NCBI GenBank assembly: GCA_965644295.1
Contig: CBFFRP010000219.1
Coordinates: 124,001-188,000, forward strand
From: Paraphysomonas bandaiensis
Taxonomy: Eukaryota > Protista > Chrysophyceae
DNA: 64,000 bases
Reading direction: 5' to 3'
The notes beneath the pieces are model-generated. The model worked only from the letters and a program-made list of their open reading frames with translations, was not told the origin of the DNA and did not search any database. Made by a program: the position numbers and the translations under genes. The stretch's first letter is position 1. Each line of letters begins with the position of its first letter. Below, in pieces: positions 3,519-56,731 of the stretch.

Positions 3519-3811
3519 TATTAGAATATGGACTGTATCCTAGTATATTCAATGTGGTACTTGAAGACAATGTACGAGAATACAGTGAAGTATGGTGATG
3601 TGTAGATGCTGTTATGATATTGAGAAAACTGAAATAGTTTGCTCTTTCAAGATATGTTTAGTAGCGAAAGGTCTACAGAAGTAGTGATTTATGCATGGCA
3701 CAAAACGAGCTTGTGTTGTTTAACACAATTCGTGTAAACGATATTAATAAATCTATCTAGTCTAACAACTTAATCTCTCTTTGATCTAAGTAAAATGAGC
3801 ATTTCCCAACA
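3519..3811 (+). repeat. 5' LTR (293 bp, TATTAG...CCAACA)
   Basis: No differences from 8681-8973 seen in a by-eye comparison. Confidence 0.97.
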
Positions 3812-6800
3812 TGGTAGCGAGCGAGGAGGAGAGAAGGAGGATAGAGGAGTAGTTCCTCAGTTCAACGAGACTAACGTTGAACAATGGATTGAGGACTTCG
3901 AGACATTCCTTATGAGGAAGGAACAAAGCGAGGTAGCGGTGGAACTGCCACCTAAGGAGAGCGACTTCGGGGAGCAGCCACTTACGTTGATGGAGGAGAA
4001 GGCGTACAGACAGGCTGTGAAGAGGTATTGGAAGGCGAACGCCATAGCTTATTCTTACTGCAGGGATGCGGTGCAGCATTCCCCGAAAGCGCTGCGTAAA
4101 TTCCATCTTACCCACAAAGCGTTCAAGGCAGAAGGGAGTGGTGTAAACAGGTTCAAAACACATGTAATGATTGATGAGTTGAAGAAGTGTTTTGCTGGAG
4201 GGAAGCAAAATAGGATCAGTGACCTCTTAACTCAATATGGTTCTTTCCGTATGCGTCCGGAGGAGACGGCGAAGGACTACGTACTACGGTTCGAACTACT
4301 GCTGAAGGAACTACAGGAGCAGCAGCAGGATATCTCGGAGGTATCAAAAACAAGTCGACTACGAGAAGGCTTGCTCAATGAAGAGTATGCTCAACTGAGA
4401 GTTGGATTATACTTGATGGATGATGATGTTAATTATGTAACTGTATCACGTAAGATAGAAGGCTATGATGATACTATGGCTGGGAAGGAAGCGTTGGAGA
4501 AGAAGCGTAAAAGAGTGGAGGAGCTGAACCTGATAGACAGTAAGAAACGATATCGCAGAGAGAGGGATCATCGTAAGAAGAACAACGGTAAGAAGAAGCC
4601 GATGAAGAAGGATACAGAGATTACAGGGCAGCGACCTGGAAGTGCCGAATATACTGGGTGCAGAAATTGTAAGTCAAAGGAACATCTTGCCATCGATTGT
4701 CCAGCATCGAAAAAGAAGTACTCGCAAAGCAAGAGCAAGGCTGTGAGGTTTCAAGATGGAAGGAAACCAGACAAAAGACTACTTACAGTTGAAAACATCA
4801 GGCGTGGAGAGCCAGCGGATTTGTCTGACGAAGACGAAGCAAATATGATCGAGCAACAGGAAGAGTATCATTTGTCATGTAATGTGTATGAGACGAATAT
4901 ATGCAGTAGTGTGCATGAGGATATTCACTATACATACATTGATACCTGTTGTTCGTCATCAATGTTTTTGATAAATGATGTGAATATACTTGATAGTCAT
5001 ATGCACACATCAAAGGTTATTAATGGTTCGAAAAAAGGGTCAGAGATATGCGTCACGAGTGTAGGTTCCCGTGGAGCATGGAAGAACATTGAGGTATCAA
5101 GTCAGATAAATCGGTGTCTTTGTTCTGGACGGAAGTTGAACGATATGGGATATCGATTTACTGTATGGTATGGTATACAGATATATGACAGAAATACGGA
5201 TGAGCTGGTGTTGGAGGGACCTATGAAGAATGGAATGACTGCTGTGCCAACACAGCAGTTATTGGAGCTTCCAGACGTATCGACATCCAGTGATTCAGAA
5301 GTAAATCTCAGTGACCGTACGGGTGAGGATGAACTGGAGCTGTTACATAGGAGAGCGGGTCATTTTAACAAGCATGCGTTGGTAGAAGCCCACAAAAGAA
5401 TGCTAATTATTGGGACTGGACTGAAACGAAAACATCTCTCGAAACGTGTTTCCAAAGAACAGTGTCTATGTGATGTATGCGCCAGGGCGAAGATCACCAG
5501 AGTAAGTTTTCGGACAAAGGATGAGGACTCCGTTCGTCCAAATTTCTCGGCCGATATAGCAGTATACTTAAATTGTCCAGCTCGAGGAGGGGAAATATAT
5601 GTGCTCAAACTAACACACCATGCCAGTCGGATGTTCTGGTCGGAAGGGCTTGTTCATAGGACTGGGTCATCGGTACTGCAGGTTTTCAAGAAGATTTTTG
5701 AAGGAGATGTGAAAAGGTACAAATTAGAAATGCATCATTACCATGCAGATGGAGCAGGGGAGCTAATATGTGATGAGCTGCGACAATATCTTAGGTCACA
5801 GGGTTGCTATCAACATACGTGGAGCTCTACGGACTCTCCTGAGATGAACGCGATTGAGGAGCGGAAATTCAGGACCTGTGGTGAGATGACATTAGCGATG
5901 CTGATTCAGTCAGGATTGCCTTCACAGTTTTGGCTAGATGCCTACATGGCAGCCAGGTACATATTAATTCGATTGCCTACAAAGACAGCGAAGGGGTATA
6001 TGTCCCCTCTTGAATTTTTGACTGGTGAGGCTCCCAACCTGAAATATCTCAGAGTATGGGGGTGTCGTGCGTATGTCCTCACTACAAAGGCGGATCGACG
6101 GAAAGACTGGGACGACAAGGCCCTTATCGGATATCTGATAGGATATTCAGATGAAAAGGTAGGATATGATGTATATCTACCTGCGACTGATAGGGTCGTC
6201 ACGTCGGTACATGTATTAACTGATGAGTCCATACCGTCACGCTCGGAGAGCTATTTCGCTGAGATAGATGCTCTTCGAGTGAAGGAGGCCGAGAGACCGA
6301 AAATTGTGTCTGACTATGCGGGCTTAGAAGGTACATATCATATTGATGATGAGGATGGTCTTCTCTACAAGACCACGAGAGTAGTAGAACGAAAGGGGGT
6401 AATAGTAGCCTATCGATCTCTGGTAACTGCAGGTCGGAAGCATATCGAGCACCGGGTGCCGATTCACGTCGAGGACGTAGTGCGAATGACTGCAGAAACT
6501 CCCGGGAATACCGGATATATAGGAAAGGGGGACGCCCTGAGTACTATGCCAGCCAGGGTGCTGGACCAGGGAAGACCTGGAGGGTTACAGGAGAGTCCTG
6601 ACCCAACCTGTCAGGAGACAGCTGTGAGGTTGCAGACCTCTGAAGACTATGAGTCTGGGGTTGTGAGCGGGGCTCCTCCCACAACGCACGATGTGCGTGC
6701 TCAGGATGAGCAAGGTACGGGTTCTTATATACCTCGTCGACCGATTGAACTAGATGGTGATGGTCGGGTCCGACGCAAACGGCTGCAGCGGAGACTGGCA

Positions 6801-8506
6801 AACGCGTCAGTTTTAGGAGAGATTAATATGGTTGAAGTACCGGATGCGCATAATATTGATCTTAACCATGCAGAGACAGAAGATATCAAGATACCAAATT
6901 CATATGCCGAGGCAGAGAGATCTCCACAGTATCAACAATGGAGAAAAGCTCGAATGGTGGAGAAGACATCATTGCTGAAAAGACGTGTCTTGAAGATCGT
7001 GAAAATTCCAAGCGGAGTGAAATTAGTTAGAGCGAAATATGTGCATACGGTGAAGCGAGACATACTAGGGAATATAGTAAAGTACAAGGCTCGGCTAGTG
7101 GCATTAGGAAATCTCCAAGAGAAGAAGGAGGAGGAGCCGTCCACTTTCGCTCCAGTGGTTAAGGGTATAACCATTAGACTAGTGTTAGCGATTGCGTTTA
7201 TGTTACAGATGCATGTGCATCAATTAGATGTATCATCCGCATTTTGCTATGCAGATCTGGAGGATGACGTGTATATGGCACCTCCACCAGATGAGGAATT
7301 ACTAGCTGGATGGTGTTTTCAACTAATCAAGGCATTGTATGGACTGCGATCTTCACCGCGACAGTGGAATAAACATATTGACAAGTTTATTAAATCATTG
7401 CATTTTACTCCGTGTATTTTGGATACGTGTTTGTATATGCGATGGAGTAACGGAAAACTGCATTTATTATTGATATATGTTGATGATATCATAATTGCAT
7501 CCGCTGATCTGACTTACTTGGAAAGCGTAAAGCGTAGGTTCTGTGAAACATTCGAGATGCATGATCTGGGAGTGTGTAAGCGATTTCTGAACATCAGGAT
7601 AACCAGAGGAGAAAATTGGTATATGTTAGATCAATCTGAGTATGCTAAGAATATTATCAAGAAATTCAGCTCAGTTATGGGAAAGAGTAGTAAGAATAAG
7701 GAGGCCCCACTACCTACTAATGTTCAGGATCTGTTGGCAGAGGAACGTGAACTTACGGAGGAGCAGAAGCAGTGGGTTGACTCATTTCCGTATCGGCAAA
7801 TTATTGGAGCAGTGTTGTATCTAGCAATGCATACTAGACCTGATCTGGCTTATGCAGTGGGGTTATTGTCTCGATTTAGTAGTTGTCCGACATATGCATC
7901 GTGCAAACTGGCGATTCACTTATTGAAATATTTGCGTGGAACAATTGATGAGGGCATCAGATTCAGTGGGAGTGAGTTCGACTTACATGTGTTCAGTGAT
8001 TCAGATTGGGCTGGTGATAGACTGACTCGGCGATCGACAACAGGATACATTGTGTTCTTATGTGCAGGCGCATTGGCCTGGCAGTCTAAACTACAGACCA
8101 CAGTTGCAACTTCGAGCATGGAATCTGAATATATGGCGGAGTATGCGGCTATGCAAGAACTGGTGTGGCTTCGGGGGTGTTCAAGGAGCTCGGGCTCTTA
8201 GTTGCGAAGCCGACTCCATTCTTTATGGATAGCAAGAGTGCGAAAGATCTCTCCGAGAATCCTGTGTATCATAAGAGGTCGAAGCATATAGACATCAAGT
8301 ATCACTGGGTGAGAGAGCATGTAAATGGAAAATTTCCTACGGCAAAGTTGATTCATGTGTCGACGGATGATATGGCGGCTGATATTTTCACGAAGGCATT
8401 GTCAACGAAACTTTTCAGTCGTCATGAGAAAACTATTACCGGGGTTAAGAGAAGTGTGTCAACCAGAGTTGAGGAGCAGCAGAAGAAGCGACCCCGAAGA
8501 GGTTAA
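3795..8506 (+). CDS. Copia Gag-Pol polyprotein with a 1-nt frameshift in RNase H at ~8173-8177
   Basis: Zn knuckle CRNCKSKEHLAIDC; protease YIDTCCS; integrase HRRAGH...CDVC, SADI, HADGAGE, NAIEER; RT KARLVALG, QLDVSSAF, YGLRSSPRQW, YVDD; RNase H FSDSDWAGD, continuing in another frame as FMDSKSA...KRSKHIDIKYHWVRE...MAADIFTKAL. Confidence 0.95.
3812..3823 (+). other. Primer-binding site (tRNA-iMet-like)
   Basis: TGGTAGCGAGCG directly follows the 5' LTR; TGG is complementary to tRNA CCA. The tRNA identity is inferred. Confidence 0.75.
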
Positions 8507-11290: not shown

Positions 11291-12126
11291 GTACACGCAT
11301 ATTGCAAATAATCAGACATTCACTATATTTTCTGTTCAAACCGAATATTGAAGTTGAATTACCATATAGTTGCCCGGTGCTAATATGAGTGTTCTGTTGA
11401 ACAATATTCAGGTCAAAATTGGGCTAATACTATTACAAGAACTTAAACCGATATCACATATACATGCTAATACTGTTGAGTTTTGCTGTTTGAGCAATTA
11501 AAAGCTGTAATTCTAAGGTGTTGGAATTATGGCCGGTAGTCGTAGAATACAGTAGTAATGAGCTGTATTATGAGAAGTGATATCATGACGATGTAAGATC
11601 GTACTAGAAATGAGTGGTAGTAGAGATAATGTGATATATTGCTTATTATATTTATTATAATCTTCTCTTATCTTAACTTGTTTAATGAGTAAATACACAT
11701 CCAGTTAACTTAGTAAATCATCCAATTGTGTCATATCTTGACAAATACCTAAATACACTTATTCGTACCATTTATAGGTCACGGCTTATTTGTTGTTACG
11801 ACTTCTTCTAATTAATACCTAATCTGAACAAGAAGCAAGTGTCAAAATTACATTCATTACGAATTAAATATTTCAGTGACAAAAAAATTCTAATGATATT
11901 GTAATTGAAATTACAACCACATTTTCATTCACACTAACACCTTGTTGTACTAAGAGAAAATTCACATTTTCGGTCTGAAAACTATTATTGTCCAGACAGC
12001 GTAACACAATACATGTAGCAACTTCCATGCTATATCCCACTACCATATGTCATGTCGTATCCATATGATATCAATAACATCCTTGAACCCATGGATGGGT
12101 CATTTCTTATAGAACTATTTCTCTGT

Positions 12127-15100
12127 TTACTGCGTGTCCTTGTTCCGAAAACGGTATATACATTTCTCTACATCGTCAACAGAGAGAGGTTTCGGCAGGA
12201 CCGCATTTGCTCCAGACATCTCGAATGTTTCTACATCATCTGGCATGACGTTTCCAGTGACACCAATAATAAGGCCAGTGTAGCCAGCTCGTCGAAGGAT
12301 AGCAGTACATGTGGGACCATCAATATTCGGCATTATATAGTCCATCAAGATAACATCATAGTGTTTCAGATTGATATGAGATGCACCTTCTGAACCTTGT
12401 AATGACGAAACGTCGGCATTTTTTACGTCGCACACCTTACAAAGCACCGCATTGCCATCTTCAGCAGGTTCACATATGGCACCTTTAGCGGATAATACAC
12501 GAGTAATAACTTTCCTTATCATGGCCGCATCATCTGCAACAAGTATTGTAAGCTCGTTCAGAACATTCGACGACTTCAGAACCACTTTATCGCAAGACAA
12601 ACGGTGACGGCTACCGAAGTGCTTTGAATTCATTGACAGTGAACTTTCTGTATCTCCACTGAATGAGATCTCCGTTTGGGCTTCAGTGAACGTATCCTCC
12701 TCGATGTTTAGCGCAGGAGAGGTAGTTTTCGCACGATCCATTCTAGAAATCACTGGTCGGTAGGCCGAAAGTTCAACGTAAAAAGTGCAACCGTGGCCCT
12801 CTCCTTCTGATGTTACCCCGATAACGCCTTCATGAAGACTAACAATTCCTTGGGAAACTGAGAACATCAATGTTAGAAAAAGTTGAATCCCACGCTAGCT
12901 ACAATATTCTACAGATACATACAACTGACGTCAATAGTAACTTACTCCATAATCCAAGTCCAGAGCCTCCCCCGCCTTGCAGAACATCTGGTGAAAATTG
13001 TACTATCTCCTTGAAAACCCTTTCTTGATTTTCCTTCGACAAACCAACCCCCGTGTCGGAGACTTCAATTCTAGCTCGGCCACATTGATAATACTGGCCA
13101 TTGCTCACCTTAGCGGACTCTTTCTCATGTAGAAAATTTGGAATAAAAGAAACAGAGACTGACACATTTCCACCTTCTGGAGTGAACTTAAGGGCATTTG
13201 ACACCAAGTTCCGCAGCACCTATACGAAGGAGCTCTTAGGATATTATATGTCACAAATGCGGTAAAGTATATATTCCTCATACTAATATACTTCAACTAT
13301 AGCTGGTAACATAAAATATGTTACCTGACTCATTTTATGACCATCAATCTCAAGAAGTACATTCTCACAACACTTATCCACACACTGAACCCCAAAAGTA
13401 ATATTTTTTTGTTTCGCCTGCATAAAGCGATTAAGGTTTAATTCACAATGAAACTAATCGCGAAATTACCTGCAGTGAAAAAGGTCCCATTGTTCTGTCA
13501 ACGAATGGCATTGCCGGTAGCATGTCACAATATAGCTGCAGAATACCGGATTCTAGCTTCTCGTAAGATAACAAGTCACTGACAATTGTAACAGCAATGT
13601 CTATGGCTTCCTGGCAGTCCGTGATGTTGTTCCGACTCTCAGCTGAGGATTCACCTTCTGCCATGTCTTTTTCAAGCAAGTCGAGACCCAACTTAGCCAC
13701 CATTAATGGGGTGCGAATTTCATGACTACAGACATATCCCAAAATCAATATATATATCAATTTATCAAGCATTGCAACTATTTTCGATTTATGGAATTTG
13801 ATTCAACCACAGTAATCTAAAGATCTATAAAACGCACCTAACATGTCGAACGAAAGCTTTCTTCGTCACAAGCATATTCTCTGCATGCTCAGCAGATTCC
13901 TTCATCAGTGCCATTGATACTTCTCTCTCTCTCTCAAGTTGTCGACTCATTGTCGCTAGTCTGTACCCAGCCTCCGTCTCTGAATGCAAGTGCTCTGAGG
14001 CGAGAATCATCTTAAGCCGACAATCGTGCTTGGAGAGATCGTTTACAGTGATTCCTTGATGGGTCATATCCGATAAGTTGGAAACGTTAGGTGTGCATAA
14101 AAAAGTAGCCACACACTCGTCACGAGAAAACAAAACTTGTCCGACTAGTTTCAGTCGCGATATGTTGGACTGTATTTCCAGTGAATGCCCACTTACAGTA
14201 AAAACAAAGTCTGGCCAACTTAACCACGTTGTTTTGGGTTTCTCCAGATTAAACAAGCGATCCATATTAAGTCCTTTTAAATCACTTCCTATATATTCTA
14301 CAAGTGTCTGTCCGGTTTGAAGAATGATTAGGTCACGATTAAACACAATGTGAAAAGGGAAAACATCATTGAGCTGCGCTCCGGATAGTCCGAAATTAGG
14401 CCCGGAAGCTCTGACAGCTGGCTTTCGACTTGTAAGCCGGTTCCTTCGACTACTGCTAGTATCTATAGAATGAGGGATGTCACCTGCAGAAACCTTCGCA
14501 TGTTCTTTGCCAATCCCCATACGGCTGAAAAATGAAGATAGACACTGCCGAAGTGTTCTTTTGGATGATGGTTTAGGGCTATCAGGATTTTCAAGGACTG
14601 TACTTTGGACGTGTGGTGATGGACATGAGTCAGCATAGTCACTGTTATGCCGTGCGAAGACCCGACTCCTACTCGATTCTTCAAGGGCTTGACGCCATAT
14701 GCTAGAGTAGAGCATTGCACTGGAGTTAGTGGTATTGGTATGACTACTATTGTCACTCATACACCGATCTGAAAAACTCCGACCCAATATATGACCTGAG
14801 TTACGCCCGGAATTTCGAACAGAATGCAAACTACTATATCTACCAGAGTGAAGACCTTGTCGAGCCGAATTGCGCAAAGAAATCCGACCGGATTGTTCCA
14901 CATTCTGTTCAACACCCAATTCCTCGCGAAGCTTCAGTCGATGCACTTCGGAAACACTCTTCCGCAGATCTGGAACCATAGAAACAATACCAACTTGCTT
15001 AATCGACCAAATCGTATATGACGCGTCGTCAATGCCTTGAGTGGTCAGTCTATCCATACGTACATCACACCCGAAGTATTCTTTCGCTACCTCCGTAACG

Positions 15101-15620
15101 AGTCCTTGCAAAGCTGGTGCGAATCGCGGCCCTTGAGGGCTTTGATAAAATAGTGTGATTTCATCTTCTTTTGTTTCTTTACATTTAATTTCGGGTGGCA
15201 CTAGCTTCGGTAATGCACTGGAGATATTTTCATGCAAAGCATTGACATTGCTTAACCACGAAAGCAAATCGGCACCCAGACAACGAAGGAGATTGTCATA
15301 TCCTTCGTCCTTCAAGTGCTGTAGGGCAAACTTGCCATACATTTCCAGTATCTCCGCCTCATTCAAGCCTGTTTTGTCAGAAGTCTTCGATATCAAATCA
15401 TAAGTCCACTCATCTGAAACACAACTCACACAAATCTCCCATGAGTGACCACCTTACCTGGATAATACTCATACCGGACCCAATTCACACTGGTAACGGC
15501 TTCCCATGTCTCGACTCCTGTGAACAATTACATCAATATGATACAATTATATCAACAATGAATCACACCGAAGTTAGCCAGCACCATGCTCTCGAAGCTG
15601 GCGTTAATAAGACCGTACAT
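12127..15620 (-). CDS. Hybrid histidine kinase, HNOB(H-NOX)-HNOBA-HisKA-HATPase_c-REC, multi-exon
   Basis: Spliced N-terminus MYGLINASFESMVLANF|GVETWE...YP|DEWTYDL (sGC-beta-like). Also NVNALHENI, FYQSPQG; HNOBA VFPFHIVFNRDL, FLCTP, DLSKHD; H-box SHEIRTPL; N-box RNLVSNALKFT; DTGVGL; GGGSGLGL; receiver VADD, ILMDYIMP, VTG, LPKP. Introns include 15518-15568 and 15414-15457. Confidence 0.93.
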
Positions 15621-16145
15621 CCTAACAACTCAATTCACTAAAGAACCTTCATCTTATATGATTCTAATCACTAGCACAGTCCGGCAATATAATGGTTGTC
15701 TATGTCTGGTAAGTGGAGTTCATATGCCATTGAGTCGCACTGATCATCGCACATGAGAAGATACGACACCACGAGCTCTTCTTTCAACATTCGCCACCCT
15801 CACTTCGTACTTCCCTTCATGTGGACGCACCACACGCCCCCCTCTCCCTCTTCGTTTCACTGTATTTTTTTGTATTTTTGTGTCCATCAAGTCGGTCACA
15901 ACACTCACGAGCAGCAGATTACTGAGAATTTTTCTCTTGTACCAAAATTTCAGTGAACATTTGGACAGACCCGCCCCACCAGCTGCTGCATATCCGCCCC
16001 ATCTGAAGGATTGGTACATTAGGAACGGAATCATTCTCATTCCGTGGTTATCGTGCACTACAACAGGGTTAATTCCACCTAATAAGATTAATACGTGTAC
16101 CAAGAAGGAGTTGGTGCCCAGTTCGCCCTGCTTCCACTTATCAGA

Positions 16146-16613
16146 ATGGGAAATGTGTTCTACTCAGTCTCATGCATTCACAACGACGACATAGTATATA
16201 ACAAGCGACTCTCCAACCCTTTTTTCAATCATGAAGGCGTATGTCTCGATCTCATCGTGTCTAGTGAGTCTACTATTTGTGTCAGGGTTCGCTATAGTGT
16301 CAAACGGAAGCAATTTTTGGTACAGGAGTGCAAGGAATATGCCAACGACACAGCTTCTAAAGAACAAGTAGTCCTGAAGTTCAGTGTTAACGACATCGAA
16401 AAAGTATGTCGTCTTGCAGATTTGGATACTAAGCCATGTAGTACACCCAAACCAACAAATATTCTTATCAAAGTACATAAGAAAGGCTGCTTGACGCTGT
16501 CAAGTCAAGACTCTAAACTTGCTGATTTTGCGTTGCTTTGCCTCCAAGAAATATTTTATGATGAAGTCATATCTCAACCAGTTGCGTTTGAAAATGATGT
16601 GACTTTTGGTTAG
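16146..16613 (+). CDS. Hypothetical 155-aa protein with an MGN start (possible N-myristoylation)
   Basis: Open ATG-initiated frame with protein-like composition, divergent from the kinase gene. No family recognised. Confidence 0.5.
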   Translation: MGNVFYSVSCIHNDDIVYNKRLSNPFFNHEGVCLDLIVSSESTICVRVRYSVKRKQFLVQECKEYANDTASKEQVVLKFSVNDIEKVCRLADLDTKPCSTPKPTNILIKVHKKGCLTLSSQDSKLADFALLCLQEIFYDEVISQPVAFENDVTFG

Positions 16614-39851: not shown

Positions 39852-42800
39852 ATGAATTCGTTTACAGATTGGCCGAATAATCCGGAATTATTAGTGAACA
39901 AGCGAGTGGAGGTCGCGTGGAAAAATAATCGTATGTACAAGGGGTGGGTGATGGGGTATAGTAGAGAGACTAAAATGCATAGTGTTCTGTTCGAAGACGG
40001 ACAGGAGAAACACTACAACATGTTCACCAAAACATTTCGAATAGTAAGGCGTATCATATATCTGCTTATAAATAGGGTTGATATGTATGGCAGGAAGGAG
40101 AAGCCAGACGTTGGAAGCCGGAGGACTCAAAGGCAGCAGTGCGACATTCAGTACCTCAAACATCTCGAAACCCCCTGCACACTGGGTACGGATACTCTTC
40201 TGGTGTAGGTGGAACAGCACTGACGACAAGTGCATACTCAACGGCACCGTATATGTCTAGGTATAATAAATGTTAGTCTTCAAATATCACGATATGAGCT
40301 ATTTGTTTTAGGACACCAGGATCCCAAACTTCCGTCGTATTTCATGTTCTGTTGGATCCACATTGCGTAGATGAGAACGATAGGGTTGTAATAAACGGAA
40401 ATCTTCCAACACTGAGTGGATGGGGTGCTGGGATAGATATGGTTCAGTCTGCTACGAATCCCAGTATTTGGTCAATATCTTTGAACGTTCCATTCAGTAT
40501 GACAGACTCTTGTGTTTATGGCATATTCAAACATCGCTACGAAATTGTGACTGCAGATGGAAACATTGTGGAAGGAAAGGCCGACAGATCTGAACAGACG
40601 CTTCGACATCAGTACTTTCATATATTTCGACCTAATTATCGTCATTCAAGAGTACGTTTGCATATATATGTTAATTTCACAGTATGAGTTGTTTTCAGTT
40701 CCGCGGAATGGTGGAACCTACCGGCAAAAGTGCTTATCAGCAATTCTGCAGCGAGTTAATAGCACTATACACAACTGACCAGATTAGTATACGCGAGGCC
40801 TTTACGTATCATAGAAACCTGACTGCATGTGTCACTAATGCACGACGGGTACACGCGGAGGAGATATTCGAGGACGCCCTCGAGGAGGTGAGATATTTAT
40901 ATCACCAGAGAAGATGGATTCATATTTACACTAGGCGGAGCTGTCCACGAATATTTCCGCATTGTATATAGGATTGATTGGTTCATTTGGATTAACCTCT
41001 GAGGAAAATGTGTATAGCACAGGTCAAGGAGGCATGGGGACATTCGGTACGTCTTACACGTATGTAAACGGGATCAAGGTTGAGAATCCCAGAGTCGGTG
41101 CATATGGAGTATCAACTAACATTACCAAGCGGCGTCCGCCAAAACCAACTGTATGGGTTTTTCACTGTGCTAATAATTTGGATGTTGCTGCTCTATATCA
41201 ATTGCATTGGGAAGAAGAATTTGGACCTAATTATCGCTGGGTAAGTCGTGGAGTTGCCGAAGCCATTGAGCGTCTGTCTGAGCATGGTTTCTATGAATGG
41301 TTGAAACTGATTCCACTGGCCACGAAATGTAACGTCAATCCTCATATTGCGTGTAATATTAAAGATTACGGGGAAAGAGAGCGTAAGTTCATGGCAACAA
41401 CAGACAATTTGATATCATTGATAGTGGACCAGCATAGTCTCATCACCACAGAAAGGATGCGGGTGTTACCCCTCACGGGAACAACACCTGTTTGTGCGGA
41501 TTCTAGTTGTGGTGATGTGATTGGTTTTGGAGGAAAACTTGGAGCAGAAAATGAATTCTCTGTGTTCAAGATGGAAACACTAGCTCGTGGTTGGTTGCAA
41601 GCTCTTATCGTTCACGCCCCGTCGTTGAATATAGTGTCTGAAATTGTTCGTCGAGGTTTGATCGAGACCACCAACGAGATCCTACAGCATGATCTTCTTG
41701 CTGCAATTTCTCTCAGAGTTGAGGAAGAAGAATGGTCTAAACTTGGATTTGAATCACTTGAGTGTATGCTACAGCAAATGAACTTCCTGTGCTGTCCTGA
41801 GATCGCCGTTGGACTGCTGAAAAATTCTGCTGTCGATAATGAAACCGAAACTCTCGTTCACCTTATAGATTTATGCGTCCGAGAAAAGAAATGGAAAACA
41901 GAGACTGCTCCCGACTCGAACGAAAGTAAAGTCAGTCACGAAGATAGTCACAAATCTTTAGGAATGGGTAATTTATTAACAGGCCTAGTGGGTATATGGC
42001 ATGAACTAAATTGCGCGGCCAAAGAGTGGATCTGTAGAAAGCACAACGCTGAACCGGCCCCTGAAATGGTTACTGTTGAAGAGCGCCGAGATAATAATCC
42101 GTACAATTGGGCTTTTAATGCTTGGGGCACTATGTACAGCGGCGAAAAACGACCGAAAAAACTAACAGAGAGTGAGAAGAGAGAGCAACTTCGTGTGCAT
42201 ATGGAGCTGGCTTTATATGATATCAACTCCCTCATGCATGTTCCTTTCTTCTCATCTAACCCTACTGGGCTGCTGTTCGAGCTTGGAAGATGCTGGTTTA
42301 TGCGAGCTTCGAATGTTCAGCAAGCAACATTGGAATTAGATGCGCTGTGTTTTATTGGGAGCAAAGACATCTCACGCGCTTTTGCTATATATATACCTCC
42401 CCTTGCAGCTTTCCTGGAATCAGCAACCCTCAAACTAATTAGAGCACTTGTATCGCTAGGATCAACCTACATCGATTCACTCCGTACTGTGACTAGCACT
42501 TTGAATTCTCGTTCTGCTTTAGGTCATCTTCTAATTTATCATTTGGCTCAAACAATGTGGTCCGGTGAGGCAGAACCGACGTTGTCTCTACCCACTGATT
42601 TTCAACCCCCTCTAAACTCTGTTCTTGAACAGTGTGTGTTTTGGCACGAAATATCAATATGGATCGAAAACGGCATCGAAGACAGTATTCTACGAAGTCT
42701 TTTTGCATCTGTCAAAGGTCTTATATTTGAGTGTGTGAATAGTATTATGAATGGATCCTGCACGCTTCGGTGCATGCACATCATTATCCAGAACGAGTCA

Positions 42801-45800
42801 GCTTTTTTTTTTCTGTTGCGTGAGTTTGGATGTGTTGTGAGTGGCATGCAGGGAAGTGATGACCTCCAACCTTATGTGAAGAGTGTTCATGAGTTCGATA
42901 ATTCATTAGGGCAATTACAAACTTATGCGTCTTTCTTTTGTTCGTGTGGAATACGTGTTGAAGCGGCGAGTGTGAGGTCATTAGTTGAAAATTTAAGAAT
43001 TCGTTATGATTCTATTCAGTGGAATGAACTCCAAGGGGCTTTTGATGGAGTCCTGGCGATGAAATACGTTGGATGGCTGTATCAGCTGCGTGGTAGTGAG
43101 TTATTTTTACAGCAGTGGAGGTTAATTGGACGCGATATATGCATCGATGCTGTGGAAGGAGCTCGAACGGTTCTGATGGAAGGAGAAAACAGCAACGACA
43201 CTTCTCAACAAGATGTGACAGAAAGTGTAATGGCGGATCTGGCAGCACTGCAACGGGAAGAAGATGAGGACGAGGGAGCTTTTGCCGCACGAGTTGCCTT
43301 AGTAGCGGAAGAAATGCAGGATAGAGTGCAGGCTCAGTTCGATGTTCAAGATCGAAGAAATGATATTCTTTCACAGGGTGAGTGTAAATTGTCAAGATTT
43401 TGTAAATGCTTGATATATGTAATCGCAGTTGACGAAGTTGAACTATCTCAAGATGTTGTTGTCAATAAGTTAATACCGGAAGTGTATACTGCGTGGAGAA
43501 AATTGGCTGTGGACACATTTTCAGGAGCTTTGGGTATAAAGGAATTGGAGAACTATTTCATAGATTTAAAAACAGATGCACAAATACTGGAGGAATTGTC
43601 ACTGCTCTCAACATGTGATTTTTCAGGCACCCCAATGGACAGTATGTCTTCTTCTGTTTTTCTGCAGCAAACACTTACCCGTTTAAAGGATTATCACTTT
43701 CTCTGCAAACTTCATACATGGCTGCCGTCATTAATTAAGCTTCATCAACAGTTACAATCACTGTTCGCTAATTCAGTGAATGAAGATTCGTTTCATATCA
43801 CGATGCAGCGCGCTTTGGTTGATATTCAGTTACGAATTAAAACTTTGGACTTGCAGTCTATTTCTGGAGTTGTTTTCTCCTTGAAAGATGTTTTCTCCCG
43901 CTACACTGCTGATCGATTGGACTTTTTGTCTGTTCTGAGTAGCTCACCAAACTTAATTGCCTGGCTACTGCAGAGAAGTAGCACCGAAGAATTCAACCGC
44001 CTTCTCCAAGTTGTGAGGCCTTGTACAGATGAGCCCAGGATGCTGAGTGCCATTGCTTCTTTGGTACATATTCGAACAATTCTTATACAAACTCTGTACG
44101 TCTATCCTCCTTACGAATCGCTGGAAAATTTCTTGGATTCTGTCAGCACTAATTTAGACTTGGAAGATCCCACGGTATCTGGTAATGCATTGTGGCACCT
44201 CAACAATATTATCAGTAGCTTCGAAGGCCTGATGGAGGTATTTGAAAAACAGACAAGAAGTCCTGGCGTCAAATCTTGTTATGACCTTAAAGAGATTCTC
44301 GACCATGGTACTTTCGTTTTAAAGGCCTCATCGAATCATGATTCTGTGCTCACTGTTGAGTTAGCTGCGAAAATGACCCTGGATGACCCCAAAATGGATG
44401 ATATACCACCTGGTGTCACTGTTGAGTCCATGGAGTATCTGTTGGATTTGCGTAGCAAGTTACTAATGACTGAAATCCCAGCTGAGCTTGAAGCTCAATT
44501 GAATGCTTCGGTTATGGTTGATGCCTTTGTCCAGCAATTGCAAGTGATGGCAGAACTCAGCGATGTGCTGGTGAATTTGTGTTCTACCGGCCATGTTGGA
44601 TATCAAAAAGGTGTGAATATGATTTTGCAGTAAAATAGTCTTTATTGTAACATCTTTCTAGGTTTCGAATTAAAGGTGAAATTTACCCTGGATAGTGACT
44701 TGTTTCTGCGCAAAGAGTTAATGAGGTTGCAACGCGAGTCATCAAATTGGGCAATAGAAGTTAAAGAATGCAGAACAAAGTATTTCTATCTCAACTTTTA
44801 TAGCATGCGCGAAATACTGCGATTGCGCTCGCTTTTGGAGACTGTAGTCCATCAGGAAAAAGAGGAGATGGATCATATGTGTGAGACGCCATCACCGTGC
44901 AATGCACCTTCAGATGTTCCTGAAGAACCCCCCCGAGGATTACCCCAATGTGATACCTCCGTTAATAACATATATCTTATCATAGACTCTATGGAACAAT
45001 TGGGATTTCAAAGGTAACTTGCATGATTTTTCACAATACTCCTTACGCTTCCTAGGGACTGGTGCTACGCGTCGTTGAGACGTACTGGATATAATTTAGA
45101 GGATGCAATTGAATTTTGCTTTTCGAATTCACAAATGATGGATCGTTTCGTAGTTGAAGACTCCACACAATTGTTAGAAGGGTTTTATACAGGGGATGAA
45201 CACTGCGATATATGTCATGATCCCGATGACACAGCAGCGTACAACGAAGGAGATATTGCTAATCCAGTGGATGAAATTCTTGGCTTGTTGCATTTAATTA
45301 GTTCTTCTGTTGACGTACTTCATGCTCTCAGGATGGTGCAGCTATGGAAAGATACGATGGATGATGAGAAATCACTTCTTAGTCGACTTGGCTCTATATT
45401 ATCCACCCTTTTTGACAGTACAGTACAGAAACCTCGTAAAATTGATGTTCCTGTTGATGGCACTGCAAATAAAGCCGACATGCTTATTCTCTTGAATGAT
45501 GATTCAGAAAAGCAACTTCCTGTATTTGTTGCGTGCACTGAAGATCCACTCTTGGTTATTGACACTGTGCTGTCTGTGTACATCCGGCGTGGTCGCCTAC
45601 CTGAACCAGGGGAAGTTATATTTTGCACACCAGAGACAACATCGGAGGAGATTAATATAATACTACTTCGATTTATACTAGCGAAGAAGTATGATAAGCA
45701 TGAATCTATAATGTGTATAGCGGATTTACACTCGCTGCCATATACTTTGCAATGTTTTCTTGTTGAAAAAATGAAAGCATTGTTCACGGAATTTGGCCAG

Positions 45801-48800
45801 GAGTATGCATCAACACTAGTTATTATCAGTGGCTTGCCACGCCAGGTGGCTTTGAATGCACTGTCATCTCACTCAGTAGACTTACCTCCATTACCTGTTA
45901 CACAACTCCGTAGGAGCTGTGCGGAAGCATTTGAAAAGCATATGGGTGACACAATATGCGTGGCAAGTCGTATCAATGGTGGAGGTAAGACTCACTTCAT
46001 TCAGAATGACATTGCCCAGAGGCAGATGTGCGGTGAATTGATTCTCTACAAAAAGGTGCCCTTGAGGGAGTCTACTACGTCGAAACACTTAGTTGCGTTG
46101 CTCTCTGCGGACTGTGCACTACGAAAAATGGTTTCCTCGCCTGAAACTGCCCATGCAAAGCTTGCATTTCACATCGACATTTCCCACATTATACCATCTG
46201 CAGCCAATACGATGTTGTTTCAGGTATATTTTTATTTGTGTATGTATTGGTTGATATAATATACCAGTTGCTGTTGGTGGGTGTGTTGAGAGACTCTGAA
46301 TCGTGTCGAGTTTACTATCGGAATCCTGTAGATATTGTCAGGATTGAACTTCCGAATTCACCAAGGAATAAGACGACGGAAGCACTTCGATTATGTAACC
46401 TTTTTCCGCAACAGATATTGGAAGTAAATTCAGAAAACTTATCATTTACGAGACCTGTTGTGCAGAAACAAGCAACTGACATGTACCCTTCTCCAGGAAC
46501 CAAGATCTCGCTTGAAGACTACGTCGAGCTGCAACATGTGTGCAAGTGGCTACGTGCGGTGCGAGGGGGAAAGGTTGAGTACGGTATGTGAAATGAGCAC
46601 TGCTCTGTATATTGTCATTGTTTTCTTCTTCAGGCGGTAGTATGTACAACCCTACATATTCGCCGTGGACTGACGATAATATAACTGCCGAGGAATGTTT
46701 TGCACTGTTGTCTGCTGAATGTTGTAAACAGGATGGCCCTGCGCCTTATCCGTCTTGGGCGATCTTTCACTCATTTATTTTATTTATGCATATGCAATTC
46801 AATGCTTTGGAGAAGTACCCCTTGTTGCAAGGCGAAGTTTTGTGTGGTATTGATGGGTTAGAAAATTTCAAGCACGTTTTTGTCGGACTATTAATTGAGA
46901 CATCAACAGATTTTTCCCTCCGATCAGTCCCTCAAGTCGATAGAGTGGGTCCTTTGCCAGGTTCACACTTTGCGTCTGGAGACGAGTTTGAAATTGCATT
47001 AGATATCATGCCTGAAAATGATATCGCCGAACTTCCCCCGCCGCCATCAGTGGTACTGGAAACGAGTCGTGAGGTTCGGAAGGGTGCCCAGCTGTCGGGT
47101 TCGCTTAACCCACCTGCTCTGGTGCAGCAATCCAGTGAAGAAGTGGCACGAAGATTTCAGAATATGGTTTCTTGGGAAGATAGCGATCATCCTGTTGTTG
47201 CTTTTAAAATGGACAGATATCAAGAAGTGTTAGGAGTTGATATACTTAGCTTGAATTCGAGATTTGTTGATCGATATATTCAGGGGCAATTGAAGCGTAG
47301 TCTAGAAGAAAACCGCTTTGACTTCAACAGAGACTGGACTAAAATAACGAATGAAGAGGGGGTCCTTAAACTACGACAAATAGAAGGGTTGTCTGAGCAC
47401 CACAGAGGCGGAGTTATGGCTCTCGAGTCTGGCTATGTCATGACTGTTGACAACATGCTCAAGATGTTGAGCATTCAGCTTCGCATGCGATTTAACTTAC
47501 CGGTAGTAATAATGGGAGAAACAGGATGCGGGTATGCAGTATGCTGATATTTTTAACATTTGATAATATTTCTTTCGTTTAGGAAGAGTACGTTAATTAG
47601 AAATATGTGTGCTATTTTAGGCAGCTCACTGCACATCTTGAACATTCACGGTGGTATGCAAGATACCGATATCATTGGTTGGATGAGACAGAAAATCGAC
47701 ATTGCTTTACGTATGAGAGACCCGACTGAAAGACTTGTCATACTCCTGGATGAAATCAACACGTGCAATTGTATGGGTCTCTTCAAAGAAATTGTATGCG
47801 ATCGTACACTTAACGGTCAACCATTTCCCTCTAAAATGAAAATCATTGCAGCATGTAACCCATATCGACTCCGTACCACTACAAACCTTTATGGTGGTGA
47901 AGAAATGGCTGGATTGGTATTTGACAACGCACAACATTTTAATTCCTCTAAAATGGAAAACGTTGGTACTGGTATCAAGGACCCTCTCAGAAATCTTGTG
48001 TACCGCGTACATCCTTTACCAGAGTCACTTATAGATCATATATTTGACTTCGGCTCTCTCTCCAGTGATACAGAGAGCTTATATATCAAAGCGATGCTTC
48101 GGAAACAGTTGGAGATGTACACTGAAAATTCTGATGCCGAATCTCGAGCGTCTCCTCAGGAAAGACGAGAACAGCCGTTGTATCAATTCTACTCCCGTAT
48201 GTCTCAATTTGATGAGTTTGTAGAGGTGTTTTCTACGCTAATATGTGAAGCTCAAGAGTGCATTCGGCAATTGGCTGATGGGGAAAGGTCGTCTGCATCA
48301 CTAAGAGATGTTGCACGCTGCATTAAAGTGTTTATATGGTTCGGTGAGCACCTCGCAAGTACTGTCGGCTCAAAGGAACAGTGGTCGCGTGAAGAGTTTT
48401 TTAATATTAAACCTCGAGCTCAGAAATATGTTCGTAGGGCTGTCATCCTCTCTCTGAGCTATTGCTATCATGCGCGACTGGTATGTATTGCGCAGAATAT
48501 GATCCCTTAACCGTATTTTAACTTTTATGGTGTAGCCACGTGCAGAACGGCGAATATTAATCAACACCATAACCAATACATGGAGGTCATTTCAAGTTAC
48601 AGCTACACCGGGAGCTTATAGTGGCCTGTATAGTCAAGGCTATGCACATTACTTTCGAGCGAGTTGTCGTTGGCTTAACCTGGACTACAGCAGTTTCATA
48701 AGTATACTAGAAGAGACGCAAAGAGAGTTTGTATCCGTCATGAACTTAGGGGACGGTATTGCCCTTAACGAAGCTCTATGTGAAAATCTTTTCATGATAT

Positions 48801-51800
48801 TATGCTCCATTCTGAATCAAATTCCTATTTTTGTAATTGGAAAACCAGGCTCATCAAAGTCACTTGCAATGGGACTTATCCAGGCCAATCTTAATGGAGA
48901 TGCATCTGATAATGAATTTTTAAAATCGTTACCAGCAGTTGAAGTGTTTTCCTATCAATGCTCTCCTCTGTCTACGTCCGCCGGAATCGAACAGGCTTTT
49001 GAATCTGCTCGTCGGTACAAACGTGAGGCTTCTAACACAGTTGTGGTCGTACTTCTTGATGAAGTGGGATTGGCGGAACAGAGTCCTCATCTACCATTGA
49101 AAGTATTGCACAAGGTTCTGGATGAGGCTGGAGGAAGAGAGGCGGTGGTCGGTATATCTAACTGGTCACTTGATCCGGCGAAAATGAATCGAGCTGTACA
49201 TTTGTATCGTCCAGCTCCCACTGTGGAAGATCTCTCACTTACTGCAGAGGGTATGGTACGTTCTGCTAATCTCAAAGGTTACCTCCAAGAAATTGCGAGG
49301 GCTTATAATGAAATATATCACAAACAAGAACATCCGGATTTTTGGGGATTACGAGAGTTCTACAGCACCGTACGAGCTATCAACAACTCCTTAACTCGAA
49401 AGAAGGAAACATCTTGCATCGAGGCTGTCGCGTTAGATGGAGAAATGTTGATGCGTGCGATATTACGAAATTATGGCGGAAGACCTAATGAAATGGAAAG
49501 TATTGTGAAATGTTTCTTCAGGCGTCTGGGACTTCCAGTGTCGGAGTCTTGGAGGGAAACAACGATAGAGTCCTTAGTTCGGAGCAATTTACAGGAGCCA
49601 GAGGCTCGTCATCTTATGTTGTTGACGAAAAACAATGCTGCGCTCAGTCTGTTGTTGGATCGAAATATTTTACATCAGGAGGATACAGAAATAATATTTG
49701 GATCAGACTTCCCATTAGATCAGAATGACTTACAAGTTTGCGTGAATATTCAGCGCGTAAAGCTTTGTATGGCTGAAGGAATCACTGTTGTTCTAGTGCA
49801 TTGTGAATCACTATACGAATCTTTGTATGACCTGTTAAATCAGCATTATGTGGAGTATGGAGGTCAGATTTACGTCAGACTTGCTTTTGGGACTTACACA
49901 CGTCTCTGTCCTATTCATCGGATGTTTCGTGTAGTTGTAGTTGTAGAGAAAGAAGAGGCCTACACTAAACTCGCCCCTCCGCTGTTAAATAGGTTTGAAA
50001 AACAAGTATGAAATGAGCATTTTGTGCTGTTTGTAAGCTGAACTTTGTGTTTCAGGTTTTCGAGAGGTCAGATGTGCTTAGAGCGTCTCACGACACAGTT
50101 TTGACGCGACTTTATAAGTTTGTGTCAGCGTTTGCTTCTGCTGGTAGTTCATTGAACTCCACATTGATGAAAACAAATGTGTCCTGGACCGCTCTCCGCA
50201 GTGCGTTTTGTGGTTTCCATTCTGATATGCTCAGTTCACTCATAATAGCTACCGAATCACAGTATGCAAATAACCCCCTTCACGCAGATAATGAAGAACT
50301 CAGTGACGAAGAAGTTTTGTTTTGTGAATGTGTGAGGCGGTTGCTTTGGATCGCAACTCCGGAGGCTACTTGCAAGCTGATAACAACCGATGGTGGTTGT
50401 AGATTAGCAGACTTAAATCGGGAATTTGGAATTGACTGTCGTAGCGAATACTTTAACTATCAGTTTCATTCATCTCTCCCTGGGTTTTCGACGGCAATGC
50501 TTGACCAGTGGAGCGATAAATTGGGGTCACAAATTATTCTAATGACCTATTCAGCACTTACTAATGATGCAGCCTCTATAATTCGTGATCAGGGGTTTGC
50601 TGTCACGCACGTTGTTTTGCATGAGCTGGACCAGGAAAGAGAGTTGCGACAGTCTGTTTCAGATTTTTTTAAAAAATCGGTGTCAGGTAGCACGCTTTTG
50701 GTGCAATGTGATCCTCTGGCAACTTCTCGAAGACGAATCGAGCATGCAAAATTTATGATTGAGTTAATAAGAGCAAAGAAGATAAAGCAGATGGAGGCGG
50801 AAAACAAATTTCTTTTTGAAAAAGGTGATGAGCATTATAGAGACGGGCATGAGTTTAAAGCTAGTTCAAACGACGGAATAGATCAGAAACTTCAACCGCC
50901 AGCTGATGTATGTGAGGACTTGGATCGGCATGGGTATGAAAGATCTGGTGAATCTCATGGAATTCATGTTGTTTTGCTTGTACATTTGCCTCGTGGGGAA
51001 ACCAGTGACGAATCAACTTACTCTGTAGACTTTGACACAAGGTGGAGAGTTGCTTTTGTCGATTCGATATCATCTGCGGATGAAAGTGGGTTGCCTGATG
51101 CAGTGTGTATGATTGGCAAAACTATTATTGACGTGTTCAATGAGCTTGATGTACAGAAAGTTTTAGTCAAGACGTTTAGGACTGCGTTGTCCCGTATGCG
51201 ATGCGCATATGACAGGTCTAATGACGATGTGAGGCGGCAAATTTTAAATGTAACCAAATGCTTAAGGAACTCAGAATTTGTAGAAATTATCAAACGAACT
51301 ATTCATAGCCTCCTTCAATACCAGTTTGGATGCAGTAAAGTCAATTGTATCACTGATGCGGCTCTAAATGAACGTGAGCTGCAGCTGGGAGGTTCATTTC
51401 AGGGTGCCCTTCATCGTCAAATATTAGGCACTATATCATCCTTGTTTGCTGTCGCGTTAAGTCATATGGACAGAAATGAAAACCTGGCCTTGTACTTAGA
51501 GGATGAATTGCGTGACTTATGGATCTATTTGTGCAGTCAATCTCTCAATGAATCGTCATTGATGTTGCAGTTAAAGACAAGATCAAAAAATATATATCGT
51601 GCACATCGTTCCACTTCCGTGCAAAATGTTGAGGACATTGTGGAAGTTAAAAACGATTCATTTGGCTCATGTGGAACGTTTATCTCACAGTTTCCGTACA
51701 GTTTCTTTATTATTCCTATTATTGACACGATGCGGAAAGTAAGTGAAGGAAGAGGGGAATCCCAATTAGTGAGTCAGTTTTCGACTTTGTGTCTTCAGTG

Positions 51801-54800: not shown

Positions 54801-56731
54801 CAGGAGGTTTTTTACAAGTTTCTTCAAACCCATTGTTCGAGATTATTGGGAGGAGTATATAGATAAGGTTCACATAAAACCATTTACTTCGGAAAGCGAA
54901 AGTGGCCTCTCGAAAAAACTTGAAGAGATACAACGGCAATTTGAAGAAGACAAAGTTGATAGTGCTGCCGAACTCTTTGTCGCAGAACTCTTGGAGAAGG
55001 TTCCATATGTGGATATTTCCATCGAGGACAGGTGTGTGTCTTATCCAGGACTTTGGCGCATTCGCAAGCCATTTTGTTTTGAAGAATTTATAGTCGCCTT
55101 AAAGCAGATGCCGGGATCGCAAGATAGATTTCCTCTCCTATCTATGCTAGCAAACCAAGATGAAGAACAACTTGCTGCGTTGCGCCATATCCCTGAAGTG
55201 CTTCAATGGTTTAGATTGCTGCATGCACAGTATAATAGTCATATTGATCGTGAAACAGCGAGAAATAAGACAAATTCAGTTGCCATACTTGAAATATCTG
55301 GAGAGTCACCGGCAAAAGCGAGATGTGTTCAAATGGCTTTTGATGGCTTTTGTTCAGCTTGGAATAGTAGCTGGAGTGATGTACGAAGACATGGTTGTAT
55401 TCAATTTTCTTCGGAGTTCAATAGCCTGCGTATGACTCCATCTGTGCCTATTTCGTTTTCCTTACCCAATGAAATGGATGAGGGGAACTGTCCACTTGCC
55501 TTGATTCATTTTCTCATTGAAAAGCACAACGCATTTGCGCAGCTTGTTGACGAAGCATACTTAATGAGGGCACGCGAAACAAAGTCTCGGTGTAGTTCAC
55601 AATTAGCAATGGAGGAGAAATGTGCTCGTGTGCCTATCATTTCATCACGATTCTTGACCAATGTGCACACAATAAGATGTAGCATTGCGGAAGATCTAAT
55701 ACCCGTTCTAGAGAAGTATTGTATGCTGTCAGGAGATGGAGCCGATATGCGTCACAGTGAAAATCGTGGGGTATATGGCGGATATGATTTCGCCAAAGCT
55801 GAGGGTATTGTACTGGACAGGTACGACTGTTCATTGCATCAGTACGAGATGAAATGATATGAATGAGTATAGGTTTCTGGCTGACATTCCAGCTGTTGAT
55901 CTTGAGATGCAAGGTTTTACGTATTCTCAGGAACAGCATTTGCAGGTACTCGCACTATTGCCGGTGTTTCATGTAATAAATAGTTTTACATAGGGTGGCA
56001 TGGCACCTTTGCGACAAAAAATTAGCCAAGAACAGCTTTCTCCAGATGTTATACGTGCAATTCAGAGAGACGTGTCAACTCCTGCTCAAGCCCAGAAAAT
56101 TTTAGAGATTATTGAACAAGTCGTATCGTTTGTGAGTGCGACTGGGGGGTCGTTGGTACAGTCTTTAAGCGAAGATGTTGGTGATATGTTGCTCGAGAAG
56201 TATATGAGAAGTGTGTTACTGATTGACGAAGTTGTTGGCAGCAGAACGGTACTCCAACATGTAAGTTCATACTATGCTTATCACAGTTTTCTTACAATTT
56301 AGTAGACGGCATTGAAGCACTTGGAGTCTCTATGGGAGGTATTGTCAGATATCACTTGTTGTGATGCATTTAGTAAAGTTCATGCTGCATACAAAAAACC
56401 TATAAGCGAAAGGTAAATCACATGCGATGCTACTGTAAGTTTGTCAAGTGGTTTATGTTGCAGTGCAAGGGAGGACCTTATCAGTGCCTTTTCTAACCCA
56501 TCCTTCAATTCGAGTAAAATTTTATCGGTACTGAAGTCTTTTATACTGGAGTCGCTTCAGGAAAAAATAATGGCGGAAAACACACCTGTATTTGAATGTC
56601 TCGTGAACCTTGAGGTAGATGGTGTATTTCTAGCTGATGCAGAATGGTTTGTAAATAGCTTTCCATATTCGATTACAATCGCTGAAGTTGTCGATGCATT
56701 TGATATTATCAAAGAAAGTCGTAAGATTTAA
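39852..56731 (+). CDS. RNF213/mysterin-like giant AAA+ ATPase / E3 ligase (Tudor-CBM20-UBA-AAA+-U-box-RZ finger), multi-exon, roughly 5,200 aa by estimate
   Basis: RNF213-type motifs YFYLNFYSMREI, SRINGGGKT, YVMTVDNMLKMLSI, IMGETGCG|KST, LLDEINT, AACNPYR, LVYRVHPLP, IALNEALCEN, IGKPGSSKSLA, QCSPLST, LLDEVGLAEQSPHLPLKVLH, GISNWSLDPAKMNRA, FGSDFP, YESLYDLLNQ, PPLLNRFEK; RZ finger WYACPNNHPFYVDRC|GRP...CAACGARIGGEDH. Confidence 0.95.

What the first reader, a model, noticed from the sequence alone, without database searches (positions are those of the whole stretch)
12127..15620. Eukaryotic gas-sensing two-component receptor: the sGC sensor module (H-NOX+HNOBA) wired to a hybrid histidine kinase instead of a cyclase
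Seen: two small 5' exons (15569-15620, 15458-15517), missed by the ORF track, restore an sGC-beta-like start, MYGLINASFE. The proximal heme His is present (NALH, codon 15232-15234), followed by HNOBA, a coiled coil, an intact HisKA (SHEIRTPL), HATPase and REC. Established: animal HNOB+HNOBA drives guanylate cyclase, while bacterial H-NOX proteins usually regulate separately encoded histidine kinases. Inference: a single-chain, intron-containing NO/heme-gas or redox sensor feeding a phosphorelay in a protist. It is a plausible under-described alternative to NO-cGMP signalling.
Basis: partly seen in the sequence, partly recalled or inferred. Interest (0 to 1): 0.85.

Follow-up and report, generated by a model that had tools for sequence, protein, structure and literature searches.

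The report
Gas-sensor domain wired to histidine kinase
A colourless marine protist expresses one protein that joins the heme gas-sensing front end of the animal nitric-oxide receptor to a bacterial-style histidine kinase; related algae have made this cyclase-to-kinase swap more than once, and this copy has a remodelled heme pocket, so its ligand is uncertain.

Summary
Observation confirmed. A 7-exon, 1013-codon gene (minus strand 15620-12127) encodes H-NOX, HNOBA/PAS, coiled coil, HisKA, HATPase and REC. All six introns are spliced in two RNA assemblies, and the intron-3 joint links sensor to kinase in frame. Kinase and receiver catalytic residues are intact. The genome has four such genes, two HPt genes, a divergent NOS and no H-NOX cyclase. 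About 25 sensor relatives share the layout (only named one: the chrysophyte Epipyxis). Their sensors nest among diatom-type sGC-like cyclases and are not one clade. One diatom-type protein is a recent chimera: 91% identical to a cyclase up to residue 431, 92% to a PAS kinase after it. None of 120 H-NOX matches in 1,604 bacterial genomes is fused to a histidine kinase, and no searchable paper describes the fusion. Nearly all changes are shared with one paralog under purifying selection. Heme and gas binding are untested. The scan reported this architecture before on two other loci of this genome.

The parts
15569..15620 (-). Exon 1 (start codon at 15620; H-NOX helix A). RNA contigs reach about 15728 upstream
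15458..15517 (-). Exon 2 (H-NOX helix B and the shortened loop after it)
14988..15413 (-). Exon 3, first part: rest of H-NOX. Proximal His98 (15234-15232, = sGC beta1 H105), Pro111, Tyr127, Ser129, Gln131 (15135-15133, = R139), Tyr63 (= F70), Ala67 (= F74), Ala138 (= I145); hinge glycines kept
14401..14987 (-). Ser/Arg-rich linker, about 195 residues, probably disordered (58% identity to the paralog against 80% in H-NOX)
   Evidence: the matching linker of relative P0111 has pLDDT under 50
14000..14400 (-). HNOBA / PAS dimerisation domain
13838..13999 (-). Coiled coil (signalling helix) running into the kinase H-box; 68 residues from the HNOBA Asp (14040) to the phospho-His
13470..13725 (-). 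Exon 4: HisKA, phospho-acceptor His564 (13724-13722)
13325..13417 (-). Exon 5: start of the ATP-binding domain
12946..13219 (-). Exon 6: HATPase_c with N box, G1 and G2 boxes intact
12127..12857 (-). Exon 7: end of HATPase, linker, receiver domain (Asp879/880, phospho-acceptor Asp943 at 12342-12340, Thr971, Lys993), stop at 12129-12127. RNA contigs run on to about 11918

Best explanation
A soluble, dimeric hybrid histidine kinase whose input is an sGC-type H-NOX/PAS/coiled-coil module. Shown: one spliced chain, intact kinase and receiver residues, H-NOX fold with proximal His. Inferred: b-type heme sits on His98; binding of a diatomic gas (NO or CO; O2 possible in this altered pocket) or a heme redox change shifts the His-bearing helix and straightens or rotates the coiled coil as in sGC. 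Because that helix runs straight into the DHp helix, autophosphorylation of His564 changes. Phosphate passes to Asp943, then to one of two HPt proteins and a response regulator. The family arose by replacing the cyclase of a stramenopile sGC-like protein with a kinase, more than once. This gene and its closest paralog are a sub-type with a retuned pocket. The direction of regulation is unknown; bacterial NO-bound H-NOX proteins usually inhibit their kinase (own knowledge).
For: Splicing and single frame. Domains. Best solved relatives of both sensor parts are sGC beta1; the fold of the exon-3 H-NOX part matches sGC beta1 at Z 19.4, rmsd 1.4 over 139 residues. His, Pro, Tyr, Ser and both hinge glycines kept. 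H-NOX 80% identical to the paralog with pN 0.11 and saturated pS 0.84. One continuous predicted helix from HNOBA to the phospho-His in relative P0111. Sensor-to-His linkers cluster at 50, 57, 60, 65 and 68 residues, close to whole helical turns. sGC signals by coiled-coil straightening and rotation (PMC8196705). Two HPt genes with the phospho-His. Trees and chimera.
Against: Arg of YxSxR replaced by Gln; the Y135A/R139A double mutant of sGC is heme-free (PMC3157391), although only the Arg is changed here and another Arg lies three residues later in both Gln copies. F120 to Ile, F74 to Ala and I145 to Ala enlarge the pocket. The genome's only NOS is divergent in its substrate loop. No biochemical data.
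Confidence: 0.6

Rival explanations
1. This copy binds heme weakly or not at all and works like an sGC alpha subunit: it pairs through PAS and coiled coil with a canonical paralog (C363 or C123), which supplies the gas-sensing heme, or it is a kinase set by other inputs.
For: Loss of the propionate-binding Arg, a shortened distal-subdomain loop and three distal changes. Moth sGC alpha lacks YxSxR and binds no heme (PMC8196705). Two paralogs with intact YxSxR are in the same genome.
Against: Proximal His, Pro118, Tyr135, Ser137 and both hinge glycines are kept in both Gln copies despite saturated synonymous sites. There is no alpha-type N-terminal extension; the protein starts with a beta-like MYG.
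Confidence: 0.2
2. The remodelled pocket senses something other than NO: O2 through the Tyr at position 70, labile heme itself, or a larger hydrophobic ligand in the opened cavity.
For: F70Y with F74A/T and I145A is shared by two paralogs under purifying selection, which looks like retuning and not decay. A distal Tyr is the known O2 discriminator (bioRxiv 10.1101/2022.02.14.480389).
Against: The canonical O2 Tyr is at position 145 (140 in the bacterial numbering), where this protein has Ala. That position 70 faces the gas site rests on my memory of H-NOX structures; no docking was possible. Tyr70 also occurs in a few canonical relatives.
Confidence: 0.15
3. Sensor and kinase are two genes or an assembly chimera.
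For: Unspliced, the exon-3 frame stops at 13825, a few codons past the donor site.
Against: The intron-3 joint is in three RNA runs and in frame; one contig spans 5' UTR to HATPase, another spans H-NOX to 3' UTR. The paralog's transcript is one ORF with all five domains. Many relatives have the same layout.
Confidence: 0.02

Closest known systems
Soluble guanylate cyclase beta subunit (animals, choanoflagellate Cf-sGC1, chlorophyte sGCs)
   Same: H-NOX, PAS/HNOBA and coiled coil in the same order; proximal His; best sequence and fold match.
   Different: Output is HisKA-HATPase-REC, with no cyclase. YxSxQ in place of YxSxR. Long low-complexity linker between H-NOX and PAS.
Bacterial H-NOX / histidine kinase systems, in particular the cyanobacterial-type operon of stand-alone H-NOX followed by an HNOBA-kinase (Nostoc STHK PAS, PDB 2p04)
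   Same: Same domains and the same logic, a heme gas sensor controlling a histidine kinase. Two of four fetched bacterial loci have H-NOX directly upstream of an HNOBA-kinase gene.
   Different: Two genes acting in trans. None of 120 H-NOX matches in 1,604 genomes of four phyla is fused to a histidine kinase. The eukaryotic sensor groups with stramenopile cyclases (that tree has no bacterial rows).
Diatom sGC-like proteins (HNOB-HNOBA-cyclase, some with a phosphodiesterase), e.g. Chaetoceros debilis, Cylindrotheca, Seminavis
   Same: Nearest non-kinase relatives of the sensor; same 100/99 clade.
   Different: Cyclase output. Database entries, not characterised as far as I found.
Eukaryotic hybrid histidine kinases (Kabbara et al., PMC6324907; review PMC6944256)
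   Same: HisKA-HATPase-REC layout and HPt phosphorelay.
   Different: Neither text mentions HNOB, H-NOX or nitric oxide for any eukaryotic kinase, and the survey does not mention chrysophytes.
Acanthamoeba castellanii H-NOX proteins (PMC4053784)
   Same: Eukaryotic H-NOX proteins reported without a guanylyl cyclase.
   Different: The paper does not describe them as fused to a kinase.

Membership tests
H-NOX heme domain | H-NOX fold | tested here: met
   Pfam HNOB 2.5e-24; model of the exon-3 part pLDDT 96, Z 19.4 to sGC beta1
H-NOX heme domain | Proximal His (beta1 H105) and Pro118 | tested here: met
   His98, Pro111
H-NOX heme domain | YxSxR heme-propionate motif | tested here: not met
   Tyr and Ser kept, Arg is Gln in this gene and paralog C291; no other letter in RNA or DNA runs at that codon
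H-NOX heme domain | Binds b-type heme and NO/CO/O2 | not testable with these tools
   needs spectroscopy
O2-binding H-NOX | Distal Tyr at beta1 position 145 (Tyr140) | tested here: not met
   Ala138; a Tyr stands at position 70 instead
Soluble guanylate cyclase | H-NOX + PAS/HNOBA + coiled coil | tested here: met
Soluble guanylate cyclase | Class III cyclase domain | tested here: not met
   none in the gene; none of 42 genomic cyclase hits lies beside any of the 5 HNOB loci
Hybrid histidine kinase | H box His, N/G1/G2 boxes, receiver Asp-Asp/Asp/Thr/Lys in one chain | tested here: met
Hybrid histidine kinase | HPt partner available | tested here: met
   two HPt genes with the phospho-His; pairing with this kinase not tested
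Hybrid histidine kinase | Autophosphorylation and His-to-Asp transfer | not testable with these tools
   needs assay
Bacterial H-NOX/HK two-component system | Stand-alone H-NOX regulating a separately encoded kinase | tested here: not met
   single spliced chain

The most novel reading that the evidence does not exclude
Stramenopiles have repeatedly moved the sGC sensor between a cyclase and a histidine kinase. In this protist, heme-gas signalling runs wholly through a His-Asp phosphorelay, and the paralogs have diverged in ligand: canonical pockets for NO and this YxSxQ/Tyr70 pair for O2 or another ligand by an undescribed pocket arrangement.
Probability: 0.3. Interest if true: 0.85.

Novelty: new variant of a known kind. 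Interest (0 to 1): 0.68.

Why it matters
In eukaryotes H-NOX sensing is tied almost wholly to cGMP, and eukaryotic histidine kinases have no described heme-gas sensor in the reviews I could read. This family joins the two. It offers a candidate NO/O2 receptor for bacterivorous marine flagellates and other chrysophytes. The natural swaps, above all the recent diatom-type chimera with a mapped crossover, allow a direct test of whether the sGC coiled-coil movement is a portable signal that can drive an unrelated enzyme. The YxSxQ pair is a natural test of how much of the heme motif is needed.

Tried and rejected
The word-indexed homolog search with the H-NOX part of exon 3 was blank; this is a sensitivity and length-window limit, since the HMMER search found 1,024 relatives. 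The scan of bacterial genomes with the same piece found nothing; two alignments were too diverse to scan with. Plasmid searches with the H-NOX and HNOBA pieces were blank. The 18S search failed, so the genus is not established here. Iyer et al. 2003 on HNOB/HNOBA was not held. The Atlas holds no cluster with this architecture among its hits, but it covers only clusters of 50 or more. Rejected: sequencing error at the Arg codon (same in all runs and in the paralog); decay of the sensor (purifying selection); bacterial contamination (spliced introns, eukaryotic neighbours, kinase in a 100/100 clade with 15 of 20 sampled host kinases); a single origin of the fusion (p-AU 8.6e-5).

Full report
Gene model. 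Seven exons on the minus strand (15620-15569, 15517-15458, 15413-13838, 13725-13470, 13417-13325, 13219-12946, 12857-12127) give 3042 nt and 1013 codons with no internal stop; all introns are GT-AG, 44-112 nt. Assembled runs X1 and X3 skip all six introns, a marine polyA metatranscriptome (X5) skips four, and run X18 is unspliced throughout. X1 is labelled 'probably DNA' by the tool, but its contigs lack the introns. One contig spans the 5' UTR to HATPase and another spans H-NOX to the 3' UTR; the intron-3 joint restores the H box in frame. The joined model was not sent to any search or folding tool; it was used only inside local scripts for frame checks, alignments and trees. The database's own near-full-length copy (P0001) came back as a hit and was not used as a query.

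Domains. Pfam gives HNOB, HNOBA, HisKA, HATPase_c and Response_reg in that order. The best solved relatives of both sensor parts are sGC beta1 subunits; the Nostoc kinase PAS 2p04 is weaker. The exon-3 part of the H-NOX folds at pLDDT 96 and matches human sGC beta1 at Z 19.4, rmsd 1.4. His564, the N, G1 and G2 boxes, and receiver Asp879/880, Asp943, Thr971 and Lys993 are all present.

Host. The genome is 62.6 Mb, the gene is found in marine metatranscriptomes of several studies, and no light-harvesting protein was found. The only named relative with the same fusion is from Epipyxis, a chrysophyte. I read the host as a colourless marine chrysophyte. Earlier scan notes say Paraphysomonas, and one says diatom; I could not test the genus.

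Genome context. There are five HNOB loci, all with HNOBA. Four continue into a kinase and receiver (C219, C291, C123, C363). C363 has a public transcript that is one ORF with all five domains. C408 ends inside the PAS domain, with no kinase found in the 5 kb downstream. None lies beside any of 42 cyclase hits, so no canonical sGC was found. There are two HPt genes with the phospho-His, at least 40 HATPase_c hits (some may be non-kinase GHKL ATPases) and 51 receiver hits, and one NOS with flavodoxin and FAD domains. Its heme Cys is kept but its substrate loop is divergent.

Family and origin. Of the best 150 relatives of exon 3, about 25 carry a kinase H box after HNOBA and about 50 a cyclase motif; a profile search added more with all five domains. 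In a tree of H-NOX plus HNOBA rooted on animal beta1-like rows, all 25 kinase-fused sensors fall in a 100/99 clade with 17 cyclase-fused proteins, among them diatom ones. Monophyly of the kinase-fused set is rejected (p-AU 8.6e-5). Without P0028 it is still rejected, weakly and post hoc (0.015). The sensor tree has no bacterial rows, used LG+G4, and includes only relatives found with this query. In the kinase tree this gene sits in a 100/100 clade with 15 of 20 other host kinases sampled, while the kinase of P0028 lies outside it (the tool warned of long branches at the root of that clade). P0028 is a recent chimera: residues 1-431 are 91% identical to an HNOB-HNOBA-cyclase-phosphodiesterase (P0293), and residues 433-825 are 92% identical to a kinase without H-NOX (P0343). 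Diverged copies from other assemblies (P0292, P0295, P0153) break at the same point. So the cyclase-to-kinase swap happened at least twice.

Bacteria. Four fetched loci have stand-alone H-NOX genes directly followed by HNOBA proteins, two of them histidine kinases. In 1,604 genomes from four phyla there were 120 H-NOX matches. The ten in long frames are fused to MCP, Ser/Thr kinase or unassigned regions, none to HisKA. This is a sample; Pseudomonadota and Bacillota were not covered.

Mechanism. sGC signals by a shift of the His-bearing helix followed by straightening and rotation of the coiled coil (PMC8196705). In the model of relative P0111, one helix (429-500) runs from the HNOBA through the phospho-His. 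The distance from the HNOBA Asp to the phospho-His clusters at 50, 57, 60, 65 and 68 residues (68 here), close to whole helical turns. The rows are not independent and I ran no formal test, so this is suggestive only. Together these support coupling through helical phase.

The pocket of this copy. His98, Pro111, Tyr127, Ser129 and both hinge glycines are kept. The YxSxR Arg is Gln131, whereas 31 of 31 other full-length kinase-type and 29 of 29 aligned cyclase-type sensors keep Arg (the wider set has one further exception, a fragment). Positions 70, 74, 120 and 145 are Tyr, Ala, Ile and Ala in place of Phe, Phe, Phe and Ile, and the loop after helix B is 5-8 residues shorter than in most relatives. 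Paralog C291 shares these changes (Thr at 74) and the first three intron positions. The two H-NOX domains are 80% identical with pN 0.11 against saturated pS 0.84, so this is a maintained sub-type. The sGC double mutant Y135A/R139A is heme-free (PMC3157391). Here only the Arg is changed, and both Gln copies have an Arg three residues later that might compensate (inference).

Literature. Ten full-text searches found no description of this fusion. The eukaryotic kinase survey and review do not mention HNOB or nitric oxide. A 2022 preprint names chlorophytes as the only protists previously known with animal-like sGC. The Acanthamoeba genome paper reports H-NOX proteins without cyclases but not kinase fusions. 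Subscription papers were not searchable, and automated domain databases already carry the architecture.

Verdict. Real and expressed; a new single-chain arrangement of known modules, working most likely like a bacterial H-NOX/kinase pair with sGC-type coupling. It is not an sGC. Gas sensing is likely for the family and about 60% for this copy. Interest 0.68.

Noticed in passing
P0028 / L016:2551-5073, with P0292, P0295, P0153, P0155: Recent natural chimera in a diatom-like lineage: sGC-type sensor 91% identical to a cyclase-phosphodiesterase joined at residue 432 to a kinase 92% identical to a non-H-NOX kinase.
   Followed up: partly
L014 (G000:C280:192000-201000, minus strand): NOS-like gene: globin-like upstream frames, oxygenase with heme Cys but a divergent substrate loop, flavodoxin, FAD domain, then a long repetitive tail with a villin-headpiece-like end.
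   Followed up: partly
L012 (G000:C408:72552-71050, minus strand): Fifth H-NOX locus ends inside the PAS domain with no kinase found downstream: truncated copy or stand-alone regulator.
   Followed up: partly
L046, L047, L048, L050, L051 (phylum of an Isosphaeraceae genome): Bacterial H-NOX domains fused to Ser/Thr protein kinases, two with TPR repeats; I did not check whether this is described.
   Followed up: no
L044, L045, L049: Bacterial H-NOX at the C-terminus of 467-687-residue frames with no other Pfam family; L044 and L045 lie directly upstream of a histidine kinase gene.
   Followed up: no
P0293, P0296, P0298, P0307: Diatom-type HNOB-HNOBA-cyclase-phosphodiesterase proteins: sensor, cGMP synthesis and breakdown in one chain.
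   Followed up: no
window 3795-8201 (+): Copia-like retrotransposon ORF (RVT_2, retroviral SH3), 1468 codons.
   Followed up: no
window 11600-11745: Short high-copy repeat just past the gene's 3' end (very high depth in all runs).
   Followed up: no
window 16036-16300+: A separate, abundant transcript begins about 300 bases upstream of the kinase's 5' end.
   Followed up: no
window 40962-55857 (+): Run of long ORFs, probably one very large gene, with U-box and RZ-type zinc finger matches.
   Followed up: no
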